Shown here in pieces: positions 34,007 through 40,877 of a stretch of 64,000 bases of DNA. The stretch is from Ministeria vibrans ATCC 50519. Its lineage: Eukaryota; Protista; Filasterea. Under the pieces are notes generated by a model. The model ran no database searches. It was not told the origin of the DNA and worked only from the letters and a program-made list of their open reading frames with translations. The stretch lies in assembly GCA_943704425.1 (NCBI GenBank), contig CALSCP010000692.1, forward strand, positions 10,589-74,588, given 5' to 3'. The stretch's first letter is position 1; every line of letters begins with the position of its first letter. Position numbers and translations under genes: made by a program.

Positions 34007-36157
34007 TTATGTTGTAGCAAGTTCGCTCTTGTACTGCCCAAGTGCACCCTCCAACACGGACAGACGAAGCCGCTCACGCTCCTTTTCGCGCTGCAATTCC
34101 ATCTCAGCCGACTTGAGGCGCGTTTGCACTGCGCACAGTTCGCTTGTGAGCGCGCTCACTTGCGCTTGAGCGCGCGTCAAGTCTCGTTTTCCATCACTCA
34201 CATGCCCCTCCAATTCCCGCACCCGCTCCTTCTCGGTCGCTTCCGCCTGTCGCACCGCCTTCAACTGCTCCCTCAAAACCTCCACATCCCCTTGTGCGCG
34301 CACCAGCTCTCCTCTCACACCCGCACTCTCGCGTTCCAGCGCCTCACTCAGCGTCACAGTACTGCGCGTCTCCTCTCGCAACCGCTGCTCAATCTCAACC
34401 AGTTGTGCTCTCTGCTCCCGTCCTTCCTTCTGCACTCCACTTAATTCGCTGCGAAGCGCATCCCGTTCCATCTCAACCTCTGACAGTCGCTCTTTTAATT
34501 CCTACCAGAAAGAATGAGTGAGTGGAGGTATATTTTGTTTGTTTTTGTTTGTTTGTTTGTTTGTTGCGTTCGACTCACTTGAACAAAATGTTGAAATTGC
34601 GTCTTGACAAGTTGAGTACTCTCAAGGGCACGCGATTCGCACCCTCGACGCAATTCATCAAGTTCCGTCCGATGAATCTGCCTCAGGTGCTCCAGTGCGT
34701 CCTCAGCTCGTCCCAATTGCTCTTGCACAACCGCAGTGCGTTGCATCTCTTCGCGCTGGCGCCGCGCCAGCTCAGTGGTGTGTGCCTCTTGTAGCTCCTG
34801 TAGGCGTACTGCCCACTCTTTAGCGCGCTCCTCACTCAGACGTTCTGCTTCCTTCACTTTGGCCCCTTCTCGCTCTTCGACTCGTCGCACTTGCTCTGCA
34901 GTGCCCCTGAGCTCACTTTCGGCAGTCTCTGCGCGCACATCTGCATTGCGATAGTTTGCCTCCGCCTCCAACATGCGCCGTGTCAGCTGCTCCTCGCGAC
35001 CCCGCTGCTTCTCCATCAGTTGGGTGCACACTTGTCGCTCGTGTGCCACCAGCCGCTGTGCGTCCAGCACCTGTGCTTCACACGTGAGCTTCACCTGTGC
35101 AATGCGTTCGTCCATGCTGCGATGATGACGCTGAGCACTCTCCAGTGCGTCGCGTGCGCCGTCTCGCTCGCCCACTGCCGCGTCTCGCTGCTCGCGACAC
35201 TCGCCAAGCTCTCGTTCAAGTCGCTCCACACGATCCTTTAGTGTTTCGGACTGTCGCTGGCTGATGCACAGTCTCTCTTCGTAGCGTCCCTCCATTTCTT
35301 TGACGGACATTTGTTGTGTCGAGCGATCGTGCGCCAGTCGCTCATTGACACTCGCGCTTGCCTTGTGTCGCTCAAGCGCCTGTTCGATGGCCACCAGCGT
35401 GTCGGATGGAACGTTGTTTCCTTTGAGGTTGATTGATTTCAGCGGCGACGTGCAGTTGGCGCTGGAGAGCACTGCGAGCAGCTCTCGTGCGCCCACCAGA
35501 CCCAAGTTGTTCCAGGCCAGGTCCAAGGAGTGCACCGAGCGATTGCGAGCCAAACATGTTGCCAATGTAGTGTCTGCACCCAGACTGGTGTTGCACAAGT
35601 TTACACGTCGAAGAGATGATGAAAAAATGCCCTAAAATATAATTATTATTTTAATTACAATGATTGAGATTGACACAATACTAGATGATACGAATTTGTT
35701 TGTGTGTGTGTGTGTGCAAAACGAATGAATTTACATGAAAGAGAACTCTGGCTGCGTCTGGATAGAGGCCGATGGGGTTATCATCAAGAGTAAGGTGGCG
35801 TAGAACGGTGTTTCCTTCCAGGTGGCGCCCGAGAAGCGCCAGGGACGAGGTGAGTTTCAACGCCGTGAAATTCAAATTTGTAACTGTTGCGTTGCGACCG
35901 TCGAGAAACCCGATGAGGTGCGCAAAGGCCCGATCGTGCAGCGAGCAGTTGGTGATGGACAGGCGACGGATGTGGATGTCGTGTGCAAGGGCTTCGGCCA
36001 CAGCCTGCGCCTCTCTGGTGTCCAGTGACATTTTAGTCAACTCAAGCTCCGCGCGCGACTCAGATGCCGCTCGTTGCGCTGCATTTAAAACTTCGGAGTG
36101 TGGTGCTACGCTGAGATCGCGGCAAGCCTGATCGTATCTACTCAGGAACACGTCCAT
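34007..36157 (-). CDS. LRRC45: LRRC45-like protein (N-terminal RI-type LRRs plus long coiled coil; centriolar)
   Basis: MDVFLSRYDQACRDLSVAPHSEVL resembles LRRC45 [24 protein letters not shown]; LRRs LDLAWNNLG and INLKGNNV; ~400 aa coiled coil. Confidence 0.8.
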
Positions 36158-36263
36158 GACAAGTTGAAAAAAGGTTGAAAAGAGTGATAATCCGTAATCG
36201 TTTACTATCGTTAATTCGTTATCGATTATCGAAACTTATTCGTTTGCATTTTATTTTCTCACT

Positions 36264-37662
36264 ATGGCGTCAACTGCTGCGCCTTCTTCAAACGCACCTG
36301 CATGCACCTACGGTTCCAAATGCACGAGGTACATTGTTCCAGGTCCGACTTTGTGATCACTTACTCAACCCGCTTTGGTAGAAAAAACCCACAACACTTC
36401 ATCGACTTCCTGCACGTCTGTCCCTTTGGTCTGCAGTGCTACCGCAAGAACCCAGACCATTTGAAGAACTGGCAGCATCTTGCAAGGGCTCCGGCCACCG
36501 CAGCGAGCTCGATAGCGCTCACAGGTTTGAAACCAACTTTTGGGTTGTTCCAACGACTGATTATCTTTCTTTTCCTCCCGTCAGGCACAAAGAGAGCGGC
36601 CAGCGACGACGACGATGACGATGAAAATGACAAAACAGATGTAGATGACGACGATGATGATAGCGACGGCGACGGAGCTTCCGCGACGACAGCAGGGCCA
36701 CCCGCCAAGAAACGGGCTCTGACTGCCCCCGCATCATCCACACCTGTGCCTGCTGCTGCTGCTGCTGTTGTTGTTGTGTCTGCGTCTGCTGCTGCTGCTG
36801 CTGCGTCTGCTTCGTCTAGCACCACCACCACTGCCTCGACTGTGAAGAGTCTCTCTGATGTGGAAGCGTCCGCTCTGGGTGTCGTGACTGTGCCACAGTT
36901 GGAGAGGAATGCGCCTCAAGATTTGGACAAGGGCGCAACTCTCATGGTCACTGGCTCGGGCGCTGCTCCTTACGAAGTCAAGGTACGCCTATCTACGTCC
37001 ACCGCTTTACAACAAATAACTCACACGTATAGAATTCGAGCGGCGCCTACACGTGTACGTGCCAGGGATGGCGTTTTCAATCCAACGCAGGGAACCTTCG
37101 AACGTGCAAACACATCAAAGTGAGTCATACCCTCACATCTTTTATAACAATCGATACGCAGCACCCGCTATTGATGGCCTTAGCTTGTGCTGTTTTATAG
37201 CCTTGCATTATTAACAGAATGTACCTCTTTTGTGTGTTTTAGGCGCTGCGCACACCCGCACGCGAGACAGACCGCATCGGGCGGGCGACAACCAGCAGTA
37301 GTGGTGGCAGTGGAGGTGGGGGGAGTGCCCGTGCTAGCTCCGTGGTCAAAGTGGGTGTGCCTAAGCTGCTCTTGGCTCACCCGTATGACAAGGACAAGCA
37401 CGACGTCACGGACTGGTGGTGGAGCGAGAAATACGATGGTACTCCAACGCTAACCCTGATTGTTTTTTTTACCATTATTCAATTTATTTTTTCTTGTCTT
37501 TTATTTGTCTCTCTTACCACACTTTACTTTATTCTTTCTGTAGGGGTTCGTGCTTACTGGGATGGCAGATCACAGCTTGTGTCGCGTCTTGGAAATGTCT
37601 TTGATGTCCCTGACTTTTTCAAAAAGTCCTTTCCTACAATGTCAGAAATTCACAACGACGCA

Positions 37663-37740
<78 letters not shown>

Positions 37741-38394
37741 CACAATCACTGATATTCTTTTTTTTTGTATTTTGGTAGACCACTTGATGGAGAGTTGTGG
37801 AAGGCACGAGGGGCATTCCAGACAACGGTGGGAGTGGTGAAGAGTGGGGGGTTGGTGGACGAGTGGAAGCAGCTCAAGTTTTTGGTGTTTGATGCGCCTG
37901 AGGAAGCGGGGACGTTTGAGGAGCGCATGGAGCGTGTGAAGCGGGTGTGTTCGGGTAGTGGTGCGGCGCATGTGGTTGTGGTGGAGCAAACGCGCATTGC
38001 TGGTGGAAATGCAGCAGTGGATGGTGTGCTGAAGAGCGTTGAGGCGCAGGGTGGCGAAGGCATTATGCTGCGCCAGCCCAAGTCGCTCTATGAGGGCCGT
38101 CGCTCCAATACCTGTCTGAAGGTGAAGAGTTTCAAGGATGAAGAGGCTCGCGTGGTGGGTCACACCAAGGGTACGGGTCGTCTGGTGGGTCTGACAGGTG
38201 CGCTTGAAGTCGAGTTGGCCAATGGCAAGCGATGCAAGGTTGGCACGGGCTTCTCCGATCAACAGCGACGCAACCCGCCCAAGATTGGTGCCATCATCAC
38301 CCTCAAGTACTTTGAGCTGACCAACGGCGGTATCCCTCGATTTCCCGTGTTTGTTGGTGAGCGTACCGATGCCCAATGGCCCCCCAAAAAGTAA
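36264..38394 (+). CDS. ATP-dependent DNA ligase (minimal bacterial/viral-type) with two N-terminal PBZ fingers and a SWIM-type zinc finger
   Basis: PBZ1 CTYGSKCTR|KNPQHFIDFLH; PBZ2 CPFGLQCYRKNPDHLKNWQH; SWIM YTCTCQGWRFQS...RTCKH; ligase motifs I SEKYDG|VRAYWDG, III LDGELW, IIIa FLVFDAP, IV GEGIMLR, V LKVK, VI PRFPVF. Confidence 0.92.
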
Positions 38395-38574
38395 ACACAA
38401 AAATACTCAATCGTTATGAAGTTCAATTCAAAACAAACCAGTGAAACCACAAAGAGAATAAGAGATAGCAAGAGTGAAGAGAGGGAAAGAAATCAATCCA
38501 TCACATTTCACAAGGAAAGTTACTCAAGTCACTGAATAGTGAATAAGAATGACTCAACTCACAACTTTTTTGTA

Positions 38575-40877
38575 ATGAGCACCTTGCTCAATGTACTTGT
38601 CTTGGCTTTTGCTTTGATTTGCAGCACTGATGCGCTCCACGACAATGTATCAATAATAACAAAATGATTGTTTTGTGTTGTGTAATAATATATAATAATA
38701 ATTATTTATGATCTTTTTCCGTCTCAGTTCTTCGCTCGTCCGAGCGCTCCCTATGGACTTCTCGCGAACCTGCTGCCGTCCCCCGCACTGGGAATGCCAC
38801 TGAGTGCCAACGTCGAGCTTGCCTTTGTTGTGGGCGACGCGTCTGGCTGTGATGCGGTCAATCAGCTAATGGTTGCCTACCAAGTTCTGGTGGCGTCTTC
38901 GCTGAGTACGCTCGCCAGCGACACTGGAGACGTGTGGGACTCGGGTCGTGTTGAAAGCGAGGTCTCCTACGGCATACGGCTGGCGAACAAAGATCGGCTG
39001 GGCCCAGCAAAGGCGTACTATTGGAAAGTGCGGACGTGGAATCGTGATGGACAGCAACACACTTGCACTTCGGCGTACTCGGCGCCACCGGCCGTCCTGG
39101 TCACAGCGCCGGACACCAGCTCGTCCGCACCCACCAAGGCTGTGTGGTCCTCGTCGAAAGAGGCGTTGTCCTTTGTGCGCCTGCGCACTGTTCTGGACGG
39201 TGTTCCGCTCGGCAACGACTCACTTGTGATGGCCACGGCGTTTGTGACAGGCCGCCACGGCGACAAGCTCCTTGGGGGCTACCGCCTGTACGTGGGTCAG
39301 ACCATGGTTGCAACGGGACCGGGGCGCGCCGACTCGCCTAGTGCGTTTCCCTTTGACGCCGTCAATGTGACAGAGGCAGTGTCGAGCGCCATCGCTGCAG
39401 ACCCCGCCCACGCTCTTGTTATTGGTCTGCAGGGCTACGGTGGTGCCCTGTGGCTACAATTGTACCTGGACTATGCCAGTGGCAAGCGCGTGATGGTGAG
39501 CACGGATAGCGAGAGTGACTGGAGTGCGCGTGATGCCAACGACTACTTTGTGCCAACTCTGTCGACGGCCAAGGCGTACAAACAGCCACGCGAGTACATT
39601 GACGCGCGCGCCATGTCCCCAACCGCATGGCTGTGGAGCAACTTTACACAGGATCACAGCTGGTCCCAGGCGACTACTGTCGATTCACCAATGCCCTTTT
39701 TGGCACCCCTTATCCCTAAAACGACACGACCTATCGCAATGGGAAAACAGTCAGTCGCGCGACGAACTCTCATCCGTGACACAACAACAAGCGCTGCTGA
39801 TCGCCATTTGATTGATTTTGGCAAAGAGCTACAAGGGGGGATTGTAGTTCATGCGCGAGGGGCGACCCAAGGCCAGCGACTGCGCATCACACTCGGCGAA
39901 GAACTGACACTCAATGGGACGCGAGTGTTGTCGCCCATGCGCACAGGAAACACCTTTGAGTCTGTGTGGACACTTGCACAGGGAGACCAGACTATTACGG
40001 CGCATGAAGTGAGACGAAAGCCGACAGTGGCAGAGAGAAAGAGAGGAGGAGGGAGACCAAACTGATAGAGGTGAGTGTACTCATCTTTCTCTTTATTCTC
40101 TCTTCCTTTTCTAGTACATGGAGTTTCGGTATGCACAAGTGGAGATTGAGCAAGTGCCGTCGACGTGTGGGGTTGTGGATGAGAACAGTGCGCTTGAGTT
40201 GCGCTGCGACGACAACGATGCGCTGATGGATGAAGTGGTGTTTGCTTCGTATGGGACGCCACAAGTGGAGATGGAAGGGACAGAGTGCAGTGGGACAGTG
40301 ATGGAGCGCAATGGGACGTGTGATGCGCCTGAGTCTGTACGTGTGGTGGAGCATGAGTGTGTGGGACGCAGTGCGTGTTCCGTCGTTGCGTCCAATGCGG
40401 TGTTTGGCGGTGATCCGTGCCACTTGACGCCCAAACAGCTGGCCGTGAAGGTCCGCTGTAAAAAGAAGCAGAGACAAACCGCTGGTTTGCTCGCGTTGGA
40501 CTTTTCTGCCTGGACAGTCCACTACCCATTTGATGAGAATGACTCGTCGTTCCACAGCGACAACGCATTGCTCAATCGAGTGTATACTCTCTGTCGCGAC
40601 ACACTGCGCATCACATCACTCGACACGTTCACCGATAGCAACACGCGCGAACGACTGCCGTACGAAGCAGACGGACTCATCAACGGCCTTGGGCGCAGCT
40701 ATGTGCAGCGTGAGTATGCCTGGCAACGCCACTCGTACGCCAATGTCTTCCAGAACCCAACGTGGCCCACTGTAAGCAGTAACAAAAGAGATAAAAAACG
40801 TTATTATTATAATCGTGACTGACTCTCTCTCTATCACTTTGTTTCTCTCTCTCTATCACTTTGTTTCTCTCTCTCTT

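What the first reader, a model, noticed from the sequence alone, without database searches (positions are those of the whole stretch)
36264..38394. PBZ-PBZ-SWIM fusion to a bacterial-type minimal DNA ligase: a possible PAR-recruited repair ligase independent of LIG3/XRCC1
Seen only after splicing: two APLF-type PAR-binding zinc fingers (CxY/FGxxCxRKNPxH...H), an acidic/Ala-Ser linker, a SWIM finger (CxC...CxH) preceded by GSGAAPYEVKN, and a short ligase (SEKYDGVRAYWDG ... PRFPVF). It lacks the N-terminal DNA-binding domain of LIG1/3/4. Known: PBZ fingers bind poly(ADP-ribose) at breaks, and the SWIM + WxxSEKxDGVRAYWDG ligase architecture resembles small bacterial ATP-dependent ligases rather than eukaryotic LIG1/3/4. 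Inference: a horizontally acquired ligase that gained introns and was linked to PARP signalling by domain fusion, convergent with LIG3-XRCC1. The acidic stretch might bind histones as in APLF.
Basis: partly seen in the sequence, partly recalled or inferred. Interest (0 to 1): 0.8.

Follow-up and report, generated by a model that had tools for sequence, protein, structure and literature searches.

The report
PBZ–SWIM–Lig E DNA repair ligase
This is a real seven-exon eukaryotic gene for a small bacterial-type (Lig E) DNA ligase carrying two poly(ADP-ribose)-binding zinc fingers; PBZ-bearing ligase E was described in 2023, and the only little-noticed part is a SWIM-like zinc module that this ligase subfamily shares with many bacteria.

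Summary
Window 36264-38394 (+) splices through six GT-AG introns into a 1602-nt, 533-codon frame. It encodes two back-to-back PBZ fingers, an acidic and Ala/Ser/Thr-rich linker, a SWIM-like CxC…CxH module and a complete Lig E-type ATP-dependent ligase. It has no LIG1/3/4 DNA-binding domain.

Exons 3-7 map end to end onto a SWIM+ligase profile built from homologues, so the splice model rests on homology, not only on splice signals.

Eukaryotic "ligase E" with PBZ domains was published in 2023 (PMC10665377). Proteins with the same PBZ–SWIM–ligase order are already in databases for Capsaspora, Salpingoeca, Pigoraptor, chytrids, Mastigamoeba, Diplonema and a mollusc.

What I found in none of the ligase papers read, nor in three SWIM word searches: the ~65-aa SWIM-like module plus Lig E core is one conserved unit. 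It is widespread in Myxococcota, Planctomycetota and Verrucomicrobiota, there often with a C-terminal WGR domain.

The genome holds PARP1-like and PARP2/3-like genes, PARG, LIG1 and two LIG4-like genes. No LIG3-type ligase or XRCC1 was detected.

Most likely function: a PAR-recruited nick-sealing repair ligase (inferred, untested). It is a new member of a known kind. The scan's index held no such finding on other DNA.

The parts
36264..36328 (+). Exon 1: start codon and the first half of PBZ finger 1 (CTYGSKCT, from 36303)
   Evidence: splice model, GT donor at 36329; partial PF10283 hit, model positions 2-10.
36382..36524 (+). Exon 2: the rest of PBZ1 (to 36415) and the whole of PBZ2 (36419-36478)
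   Evidence: PF10283 E 6.3e-13, two stretches; genome scan hit at the same coordinates; aligns across both fingers of the S. rosetta orthologue P0020.
36585..36982 (+). Exon 3: acidic tract (36605-36676), KKR NLS-like patch (36698-36721), Ala/Ser/Thr-rich linker, and the first strands of the SWIM-like module (36908-36982)
   Evidence: translation; the exon tail maps to profile positions 5-29. Exon 2, intron 2 and exon 3 lie in one open frame (ORF 36302-37123).
37033..37119 (+). Exon 4: zinc-ligand core of the SWIM-like module (YTCTC...RTCKHIK)
   Evidence: PF04434 E 0.021, below the gathering score; home-built profile positions 30-58, E 8e-13; only hit of the bacterial module profile in the whole genome.
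37243..37438 (+). Exon 5: end helix of the SWIM module (to about 37281), Gly/Ser linker, start of the nucleotidyltransferase domain (from 37357) with motif I SEKYDG; catalytic Lys codon at 37429-37431
   Evidence: NF006592 positions 24-53; profile positions 61-124.
37544..37640 (+). Exon 6: VRAYWDG...FPT, continuing the nucleotidyltransferase domain
   Evidence: NF006592 positions 55-84, E 1.6e-6; profile positions 126-154.
37779..38394 (+). Exon 7: motifs III-V (LDGELW, FLVFDA, EGIMLR, LKVK), the OB_2 domain (38167-38364) with motif VI PRFPVF, and the stop codon at 38392-38394
   Evidence: PF14743 8.5e-26 and PF01068 6.9e-5. NF006592 1.4e-68, positions 86-282; best PDB matches are Lig E 4D05, 8U6X and 6GDR.
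37641..37778 (+). Intron 6, containing a (CA)n microsatellite at about 37665-37741

Best explanation
The locus is one nuclear gene of a eukaryote. It encodes a member of the eukaryotic 'ligase E' family, in the subfamily that keeps an N-terminal SWIM-like zinc module directly upstream of the Lig E catalytic core (nucleotidyltransferase plus OB_2).

Proposed mechanism:
1. DNA breaks activate the genome's PARP1-like and PARP2/3-like enzymes, which make poly(ADP-ribose).
2. The two adjacent PBZ fingers at the N-terminus bind the polymer and concentrate the protein at the break.
3. The long disordered acidic and Ala/Ser/Thr linker, which carries a KKR patch, acts as a tether and probably as a nuclear import signal.
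4. The Lig E core, adenylated on the Lys of SEKYDG, seals the nick with ATP.
5. The ~65-aa SWIM-like module is an independently folded zinc domain on a flexible linker. It is inherited together with the core, and I take it as an accessory substrate-sensing or DNA-binding module for a ligase that has no LIG1/3/4-type DNA-binding domain.

Shown here: gene structure, domain identities, catalytic motifs, family placement, and the presence of PARP and PARG in the genome.

Known from the literature: Lig E cores seal nicks without extra domains, and a PBZ-bearing ligase E is radiation-induced and raises radiotolerance.

Inferred: PAR-dependent recruitment, nuclear location, the role of the SWIM module, and substitution for LIG3/XRCC1.
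For: - Splice model with six GT-AG introns and an intact 533-codon frame.
- Collinear, abutting coverage of NF006592 by exons 5-7, and of a SWIM+ligase profile by exons 3-7: positions 5-29, 30-58, 61-124, 126-154 and 157-358.
- PBZ at 6.3e-13. PBZ2, the linker and the start of the SWIM module lie in one uninterrupted open frame.
- The same domain order in Capsaspora KJE92270.1, S. rosetta XP_004993722.1, S. infusionum, Pigoraptor, chytrids, Mastigamoeba, Diplonema and Gigantopelta. The choanoflagellate proteins have the same 21-residue back-to-back PBZ pair.
- The closest solved structures are Lig E.
- In the careful tree the window sits among SWIM-bearing eukaryotic sequences. It lies outside the bacterial clan (99/96) and outside the C-terminal-PBZ clan (99/96).
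- SWIM module: only Pfam SWIM is hit, in 22 of 29 bacterial modules and always below threshold. 25 of 30 protein-language-model look-alike clusters are SWIM. AlphaFold gives pLDDT 88 for a three-strand, zinc-knuckle, helix fold. In a full-length model the module is separated from the core by a 30-residue stretch with pLDDT below 50.
- Fusion partners of the SWIM–Lig E unit elsewhere are all damage-response modules: WGR and BRCT in bacteria, FHA+PBZ in Diplonema, and Pol beta palm/thumb in a metagenome protein.
- The genome has PARP1-like, PARP2/3-like, two PARG loci and an APLF-like FHA–PBZ protein. It has LIG1 and two LIG4-like genes, but no XRCC1_N and no ligase-linked zf-PARP.
- Literature: PMC10665377 (A. 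vaga and Mortierella ligase E induced by X-rays, improves human cell radiotolerance, PBZ domains noted). PMC7470946 and PMC6144786 (Lig E seals nicks with a minimal scaffold).
Against: - There is no transcript evidence. Exon 1, and therefore PBZ1, rests on splice signals plus the PBZ pattern and the choanoflagellate alignment only.
- Intron 2 is 60 nt, in frame and stop-free, so it could be retained.
- PBZ1 has Thr where APLF has the second PAR-contacting Tyr (recalled from the APLF literature, not checked here). Neither finger has the [K/R] three residues before the first Cys of the published consensus (PMC4030884).
- PAR binding by any ligase E PBZ has not been tested, including in PMC10665377.
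- The SWIM call is below Pfam's threshold and has no structural match. The module is not markedly basic, so DNA binding is a guess.
- The absence of LIG3 and XRCC1 comes from exon-wise scans of a fragmented 2860-contig assembly.
Confidence: 0.7

Rival explanations
1. It is a repair ligase of the same family, but the PBZ fingers do not act through PAR-dependent recruitment. They could be degenerate, bind another ligand or partner, or regulate the enzyme. The enzyme then works constitutively, for example in base-excision or replication-associated nick sealing beside LIG1.
For: PBZ1 departs from the APLF-type consensus at one aromatic position, and both fingers lack the upstream basic residue (consensus from PMC4030884). 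PAR binding is untested for any ligase E. Many SWIM–Lig E proteins work without PBZ.
Against: PBZ2 matches the consensus fully, and Pfam scores it at 6.3e-13. PBZ has been added to this ligase family in different positions and lineages, N-terminal and C-terminal, which argues for selection of the PAR link. PARP and PARG are present.
Confidence: 0.15
2. The SWIM-like module is not an accessory DNA or substrate sensor. It is instead a protein-protein interaction or autoregulatory domain, and recruitment and DNA binding rest on PBZ and the Lig E core alone.
For: SWIM domains in other proteins mediate protein contacts (general knowledge). The module has no net positive charge (alignment A2). Canonical Lig E and the C-terminal-PBZ clan work without it.
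Against: The module is invariant in its zinc ligands and is kept with the core across at least seven bacterial phyla and several eukaryotic supergroups, whatever the other fusion partners. That fits a role tied to catalysis or substrate rather than to a lineage-specific partner.
Confidence: 0.1
3. Gene-model artefact: the PBZ exons belong to a separate upstream gene, or the region is bacterial contamination or a very recent transfer.
For: There is no RNA evidence. The ligase core is about 53% identical to bacterial proteins.
Against: PBZ2 through the start of the SWIM module is one open frame. Four introns interrupt the bacterial-like SWIM+core region. GC content matches the neighbouring sequence. 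Orthologues in other eukaryotes have the same order. The window lies outside the bacterial clan. The neighbouring genes are eukaryotic.
Confidence: 0.03

Closest known systems
Eukaryotic DNA ligase E (AvLigE of Adineta vaga, MvLigE of Mortierella verticillata; Nicolas et al. 2023, PMC10665377)
   Same: NT (PF01068) plus OB_2 (PF14743) Lig E core in a eukaryote, fused to PBZ fingers, and proposed as a horizontally derived DNA-damage ligase.
   Different: In AvLigE and MvLigE the PBZ fingers are C-terminal. In my tree the C-terminal-PBZ proteins form their own clan without the SWIM-like module. The window protein has N-terminal PBZ plus SWIM. The paper mentions N-terminal PBZ for three animals only and never mentions SWIM.
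Database orthologues: Capsaspora owczarzaki KJE92270.1, Salpingoeca rosetta XP_004993722.1, S. infusionum, Pigoraptor chileana, Thoreauomyces, Irineochytrium, Mastigamoeba balamuthi, Diplonema japonicum, Gigantopelta aegis
   Same: N-terminal PBZ(s), linker, CxC…CxH module and Lig E core in the same order. The choanoflagellate proteins share the back-to-back PBZ pair and an acidic linker.
   Different: Only about 45-53% identical in the ligase part. The number of PBZ fingers, the linker length and the acidity vary. Diplonema adds an FHA domain.
Leaderless bacterial NT–OB_2(–WGR) ligases of Myxococcota and Planctomycetota (noted in PMC7470946 and PMC8455567)
   Same: The same SWIM-like N-terminal module, flexible linker and Lig E core. 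About 50-53% identity to exon 7. The module profile recognises exon 4 at 8e-13.
   Different: These are bacterial and intron-less, with no PBZ. About 40% of them carry a C-terminal WGR and a few carry BRCT. Neither paper mentions the N-terminal module.
Canonical periplasmic Lig E (Psychromonas 4D05, Alteromonas 6GDR, Neisseria; PMC6144786, PMC10799422)
   Same: The catalytic core. These are the best solved-structure matches, at E 6e-42 to 2e-36. NF006592 is above its cut-off.
   Different: They carry a signal peptide and no SWIM or PBZ, and are proposed to act on extracellular or periplasmic DNA. The window protein has no leader and carries nuclear-type targeting modules.
LIG3-alpha/XRCC1
   Same: Functional analogy only: a nick-sealing ligase brought to breaks through PAR, with an N-terminal zinc module tethered in front of the catalytic region.
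   Different: A different ligase lineage. LIG3 has zf-PARP, DNA-binding domain PF04675, OB PF04679 and BRCT. None of these is present here, and PAR is read by PBZ in cis rather than by XRCC1's BRCT.
APLF
   Same: PBZ fingers plus an acidic tract.
   Different: APLF has FHA and Ku-binding modules and no catalytic domain, and its fingers are spaced apart. The genome has its own APLF-like FHA–PBZ gene elsewhere.

Membership tests
Lig E-type ATP-dependent DNA ligase (NCBIfam NF006592 / PF01068+PF14743) | Nucleotidyltransferase motifs I, III, IIIa, IV and V, and OB motif VI | tested here: met
   SEKYDG, LDGELW, FLVFDA, EGIMLR, LKVK and PRFPVF can be read directly in exons 5-7 and align to the family consensus.
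Lig E-type ATP-dependent DNA ligase (NCBIfam NF006592 / PF01068+PF14743) | OB domain of the OB_2 type (PF14743), not PF04679; family model above its cut-off | tested here: met
   PF14743 at 8.5e-26. NF006592 at 231 bits against a cut-off of 200 on exon 7 alone, with exons 5-7 collinear on the model.
Canonical bacterial Lig E | N-terminal periplasmic leader and no appended domains | tested here: not met
   The N-terminus is a PBZ pair, and a SWIM-like module precedes the core.
Eukaryotic ligase E with PBZ (PMC10665377) | Lig E core encoded in a eukaryotic nuclear genome and fused to PBZ | tested here: met
   Six spliceosomal-type introns, PBZ and ligase in one model. Placed among eukaryotic sequences in the tree.
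Eukaryotic ligase E with PBZ (PMC10665377) | Induction by DNA damage and contribution to break ligation | not testable with these tools
   Needs expression and activity assays.
PBZ zinc finger (PF10283) | C-x5-C-x6-H-x5-H with Cx[F/Y]GxxC and basic residues after the second Cys | tested here: met
   Both fingers fit. PF10283 at 6.3e-13, above the gathering score, on exon 2. Departures: Thr instead of an aromatic residue after Cys2 in PBZ1, and no [K/R] at position -3 in either finger (consensus from PMC4030884).
PBZ zinc finger (PF10283) | Binds poly(ADP-ribose) | not testable with these tools
   Needs a biochemical assay.
SWIM zinc finger (PF04434) | CxCxnCxH signature with flanking strands and helix | tested here: met
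   The sequence reads C-T-C-x14-C-K-H. The ligands are invariant in 29 of 29 aligned modules. The predicted fold is three strands, a knuckle and helices, with pLDDT 88.
SWIM zinc finger (PF04434) | Pfam model above the gathering score, or a structural match to a solved SWIM domain | tested here: inconclusive
   14.8 bits against 19.6 for exon 4. 22 of 29 bacterial modules hit SWIM only, all below threshold. 25 of 30 ESM-Atlas look-alike clusters are SWIM. No PDB match: Foldseek E>1 and best VIA Z 2.5.
LIG1/LIG3/LIG4 | N-terminal DNA-binding domain PF04675, OB PF04679, and for LIG3 zf-PARP and BRCT | tested here: not met
   No PF04675 in any exon. PF04679 appears only as a sub-threshold 14-residue trace. 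No LIG1/3/4 chain among PDB matches at E<=0.001.

The most novel reading that the evidence does not exclude
The ~65-aa SWIM-like zinc module may be an undescribed, obligate accessory domain, a nick or DNA-end sensor or a clamp substitute. It would define a leaderless 'SWIM–Lig E' subfamily shared by bacteria and eukaryotes. Lineages have then bolted different break-targeting modules onto this unit: WGR or BRCT in bacteria, and PBZ, FHA or Pol beta in eukaryotes. In organisms such as this one, which lack detectable LIG3 and XRCC1, it would be the PAR-directed single-strand-break ligase. That would be a second, independent invention of the 'zinc finger + ligase + PAR reader' solution.
Probability: 0.3. 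Interest if true: 0.6.

Novelty: new member of a known kind. Interest (0 to 1): 0.4.

Why it matters
It adds another unicellular eukaryote to the list of lineages that wire a bacterial-type minimal ligase into PARP signalling. Here this occurs in a genome where no LIG3 or XRCC1 was detected.

It also points to a conserved zinc module in front of the Lig E core that the ligase papers I read do not mention. Three full-text searches pairing SWIM with DNA ligase, PBZ or ATP-dependent ligase found no paper describing it.

If that module senses nicks or DNA ends, it would explain how a 'minimal' ligase is made efficient inside cells. It would also give a compact, engineerable ligase scaffold.

The main claim, a PBZ-fused ligase E in eukaryotes, is already in the literature, so the finding is mostly confirmatory.

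Tried and rejected
- **Joined protein.** All searches used single exons by reference or database orthologues.
- **Identifying the organism.** Holozoan-like hints come only from other first-stage notes.
- **Conserved bacterial neighbours of SWIM–Lig E.** All-against-all comparison of flanking ORFs in 58 loci gave only lineage-restricted synteny and no universal partner.
- **Solved relatives of the SWIM module.** A profile against PDB sequences gave only chance hits such as a MASP-1 sushi domain. Foldseek gave E>1. The VIA wide search gave a best Z of 2.5, to Rieske ferredoxins. This is not evidence of a new fold.
- **Docking of the SWIM module on the ligase core.** The full-length AlphaFold model only shows a disordered 30-residue linker and pTM 0.67.
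- **Rooting the tree with canonical periplasmic Lig E.** I could not obtain such sequences. A class-wide genome search from a MAG labelled Alcaligenaceae returned matches in open frames of about 340-640 aa, longer than canonical Lig E and so probably the leaderless type; I did not inspect them for the SWIM motif. The direction of the inter-domain transfer stays open.
- **LIG3.** The two extra PF04675 ligase loci both match LIG4 far better than LIG3.
- **Literature.** Searches for SWIM+DNA ligase+PBZ (0 papers), SWIM+ATP-dependent DNA ligase (nothing relevant by title or abstract) and ligase E+PBZ (only the 2023 paper) gave nothing further.
Full report
**What is there**

Reading 35900-38800 and translating it gives a seven-exon model on the + strand:
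- E1 36264-36328
- E2 36382-36524
- E3 36585-36982
- E4 37033-37119
- E5 37243-37438
- E6 37544-37640
- E7 37779-38394

All six introns (50-138 nt) are GT…AG. The frame is intact over 1602 nt, which is 533 codons plus the stop. GC content (0.51-0.54) is like the rest of the window.

Every search used single exons by reference or database orthologues.

**Domain checks, exon by exon**

- **PBZ.** Pfam finds PBZ (PF10283) in exon 2 at 6.3e-13 with two stretches, and the first half of a PBZ in exon 1. Spliced, PBZ1 reads CTYGSKCT|RKNPQHFIDFLH. PBZ2, CPFGLQCYRKNPDHLKNWQH, follows one residue later.
- **SWIM.** Exon 4 gives a weak SWIM hit (PF04434, E 0.021, below the gathering score).
- **Ligase.** Exon 7 gives DNA_ligase_OB_2 (PF14743, 8.5e-26) and DNA_ligase_A_M. 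NCBIfam places exons 5, 6 and 7 on positions 24-53, 55-84 and 86-282 of NF006592 (PRK09125, the Lig E equivalog). Exon 7 alone scores 231 bits against a cut-off of 200.
- **No LIG1/3/4 features.** No exon matches the LIG1/3/4 DNA-binding domain. The best solved relatives of exon 7 are the Lig E structures 4D05, 8U6X and 6GDR, then Chlorella virus ligase. No LIG1/3/4 chain matches at E<=0.001.

All nucleotidyltransferase motifs and OB motif VI are present. The motif I lysine lies at 37429-37431.

**Support for the splice model and the fusion**

I built a profile from 182 homologues, running from the SWIM motif to the end of the ligase, without the window sequence. It is covered by the exons in order and without gaps:
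- E3 tail: positions 5-29
- E4: 30-58 (E 8e-13)
- E5: 61-124
- E6: 126-154
- E7: 157-358

PBZ2, the linker and the first strands of the SWIM module lie in one uninterrupted open frame (ORF 36302-37123). Intron 2 is in frame and stop-free, so the PBZ part cannot easily be a separate gene. Exon 2 aligns across both fingers of the Salpingoeca rosetta orthologue.

**Relatives**

An exhaustive search with exon 7 found 10,351 relatives, the best about 50% identical. Scanning the top 150 for motifs shows two main eukaryotic architectures:
- Ligase first with C-terminal PBZ and no SWIM motif.
- N-terminal modules, then a CxC…CxH motif 60-100 residues before motif I, then the ligase.

Fifteen representatives have N-terminal PBZ + SWIM + ligase. 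The named ones are Capsaspora owczarzaki (KJE92270.1), Pigoraptor chileana, Salpingoeca rosetta (XP_004993722.1), S. infusionum, the chytrids Thoreauomyces and Irineochytrium, Mastigamoeba balamuthi, Diplonema japonicum (with an extra FHA domain) and the mollusc Gigantopelta aegis. Exidia and Planoprotostelium have SWIM + ligase without PBZ. One metagenomic protein is Pol beta palm/thumb + SWIM + ligase.

Pfam does not call SWIM in any of ten such proteins at E<=0.01. That may be why domain-based drawings omit it.

**The SWIM–Lig E unit is bacterial as well**

- A word search with the Pigoraptor protein returned 5489 hits. All of the best 119 carry CxCPAWRNQ…RTCKH at about residue 31. About 47 also have a C-terminal WGR and five have BRCT. 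The named sources are Nannocystis, Labilithrix, Polyangiaceae, Myxococcaceae and a Burkholderiales MAG.
- A scan of GTDB species genomes found at least 587 stretches. All of the best 80 have the module in the same ORF as the ligase: Myxococcota 37, Planctomycetota 28, Verrucomicrobiota 7, then Acidobacteriota, Pseudomonadota, Armatimonadota and Cyanobacteriota.
- The module is about 65 residues, M.DL.DGES.E..GSG..PY.LKN.GGVYSC.CPAW…RTCKHL..LRGD.AE..R.G. The window sequence DLDKGATLMVTGSGAAPYEVK|NSSGAYTCTCQGWRFQSNAGNLRTCKHIK|ALRTPARETDRIG fits it over its whole length.

**Is the module a SWIM domain?**

- 22 of 29 bacterial modules hit Pfam SWIM and nothing else, all below threshold.
- 25 of 30 ESM-Atlas look-alike clusters are SWIM clusters, with a score of 0.93.
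- AlphaFold gives a confident small fold (pLDDT 88) of three strands, the CxC knuckle, and CxH at the start of a helix pair.
- No solved structure matches.
- In a full-length Nannocystis model the module is folded but separated from the core by a 30-residue stretch with pLDDT below 50, and pTM is 0.67. That suggests a tethered module.
- In the window's own genome the module profile hits only this gene.

**Phylogeny**

A careful IQ-TREE analysis used the exon 7 region: 61 rows and 204 columns.
- The C-terminal-PBZ, SWIM-less eukaryotic proteins form one clan (99/96).
- All 18 bacterial sequences plus one unnamed protein form another clan (99/96).
- The SWIM-bearing eukaryotic sequences lie unresolved between them, and the window sits at the base of this group.

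One transfer between the domains therefore suffices. The tree is unrooted, because I could not obtain canonical Lig E sequences, so its direction is not shown.

Four introns interrupt the bacterial-like part of the gene, and orthologues occur in Opisthokonta, Amoebozoa and Euglenozoa. It is therefore an old resident gene, not a recent import.

**Genomic context of the pathway**

The assembly is 29.7 Mb in 2860 contigs.

Present:
- A PARP1-like gene (zf-PARP, WGR and catalytic domain collinear on C1877).
- A PARP2/3-like gene (C2175) and further PARP catalytic domains.
- Two PARG loci.
- An APLF-like FHA–PBZ protein and an E2-like PBZ protein.
- One LIG1-like and two LIG4-like ligases.
- A second, divergent NT–OB_2 ligase.

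Not detected: XRCC1_N, or any zf-PARP outside the PARP1-like gene.

Absence in a fragmented assembly scanned exon by exon is only suggestive.

**What is already known**

- Nicolas et al. 2023 (PMC10665377) described eukaryotic ligase E, its likely horizontal origin and its induction by X-rays in Adineta vaga and Mortierella. They also showed improved radiotolerance of human cells expressing it. They noted PBZ domains: C-terminal in rotifers, Thecamonas and Mortierella, and N-terminal in three animals. PAR-dependent recruitment was not tested there, and SWIM is not mentioned.
- Williamson and Leiros 2020 (PMC7470946) noted a delta-proteobacterial and Planctomycetia NT–OB_2–WGR cluster linked to fungal enzymes, again without the N-terminal module.
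- PMC8455567 noted leaderless Myxococcales sequences grouping with fungal ones.
- No paper in the searchable library combines SWIM, DNA ligase and PBZ.

**Verdict**

The acidic tract is recurrent (S. rosetta, chytrids) but missing in several orthologues. The histone-binding idea has no support beyond analogy.

The residual novelty is that the SWIM-like module and the Lig E core form one conserved unit across bacteria and eukaryotes. Different break-response targeting modules have been attached to it repeatedly. What the module does remains an open, testable question.

Noticed in passing
G000:C1837 (L002:386-1743, + strand): A second, divergent NT+OB_2 ligase gene in the same genome. Motif I reads YVSRKIDGVRAV, PF01068 scores 8.8e-11 and PF14743 scores 6.8e-7. 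It has low-complexity inserts and at least one intron. It may be an organellar or Lig K-like paralogue.
   Followed up: partly
G000:C238 (L003:1498-2979, - strand): An APLF-like protein: N-terminal FHA_2 (5.6e-5), long acidic and Ser/Thr tracts, and a C-terminal PBZ CMYGTKCYRKNPQHLVDFAH (4.6e-13).
   Followed up: partly
G000:C31 (L004:1114-1593, + strand): A ubiquitin-conjugating (E2-like) fold fragment fused to a PBZ finger (UQ_con 8e-5, PBZ 9.5e-12). It may be a PAR-directed E2.
   Followed up: partly
G000:C2781 (L013) and G000:C636 (L014): Two distinct LIG4-like ligase loci. Both match PDB LIG4 far better than LIG3 or LIG1. There is one LIG1-like locus on C642. No LIG3-type ligase or XRCC1_N was detected.
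   Followed up: partly
window 37665-37741: A long (CA)n microsatellite inside intron 6 of the ligase gene.
   Followed up: no
P0010 (metagenome) and P0026 (Diplonema japonicum): Other fusions of the SWIM–Lig E unit: DNA polymerase beta palm/thumb + SWIM + ligase, and FHA + 2 PBZ + SWIM + ligase.
   Followed up: partly
P0003 (Pigoraptor chileana) and P0006 (Capsaspora) in the tree: The two filasterean PBZ–SWIM–ligases sit next to the bacterial clan, with weak support. P0003 is 52-59% identical to its best bacterial matches over the SWIM+ligase region. This hints at more than one transfer, or at uneven rates.
   Followed up: no
window 35681-36157 (- strand) and 36158-36263: A divergently transcribed leucine-rich-repeat gene ends about 106 nt upstream of the ligase start codon, so the two genes share a short AT-rich promoter region.
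   Followed up: no
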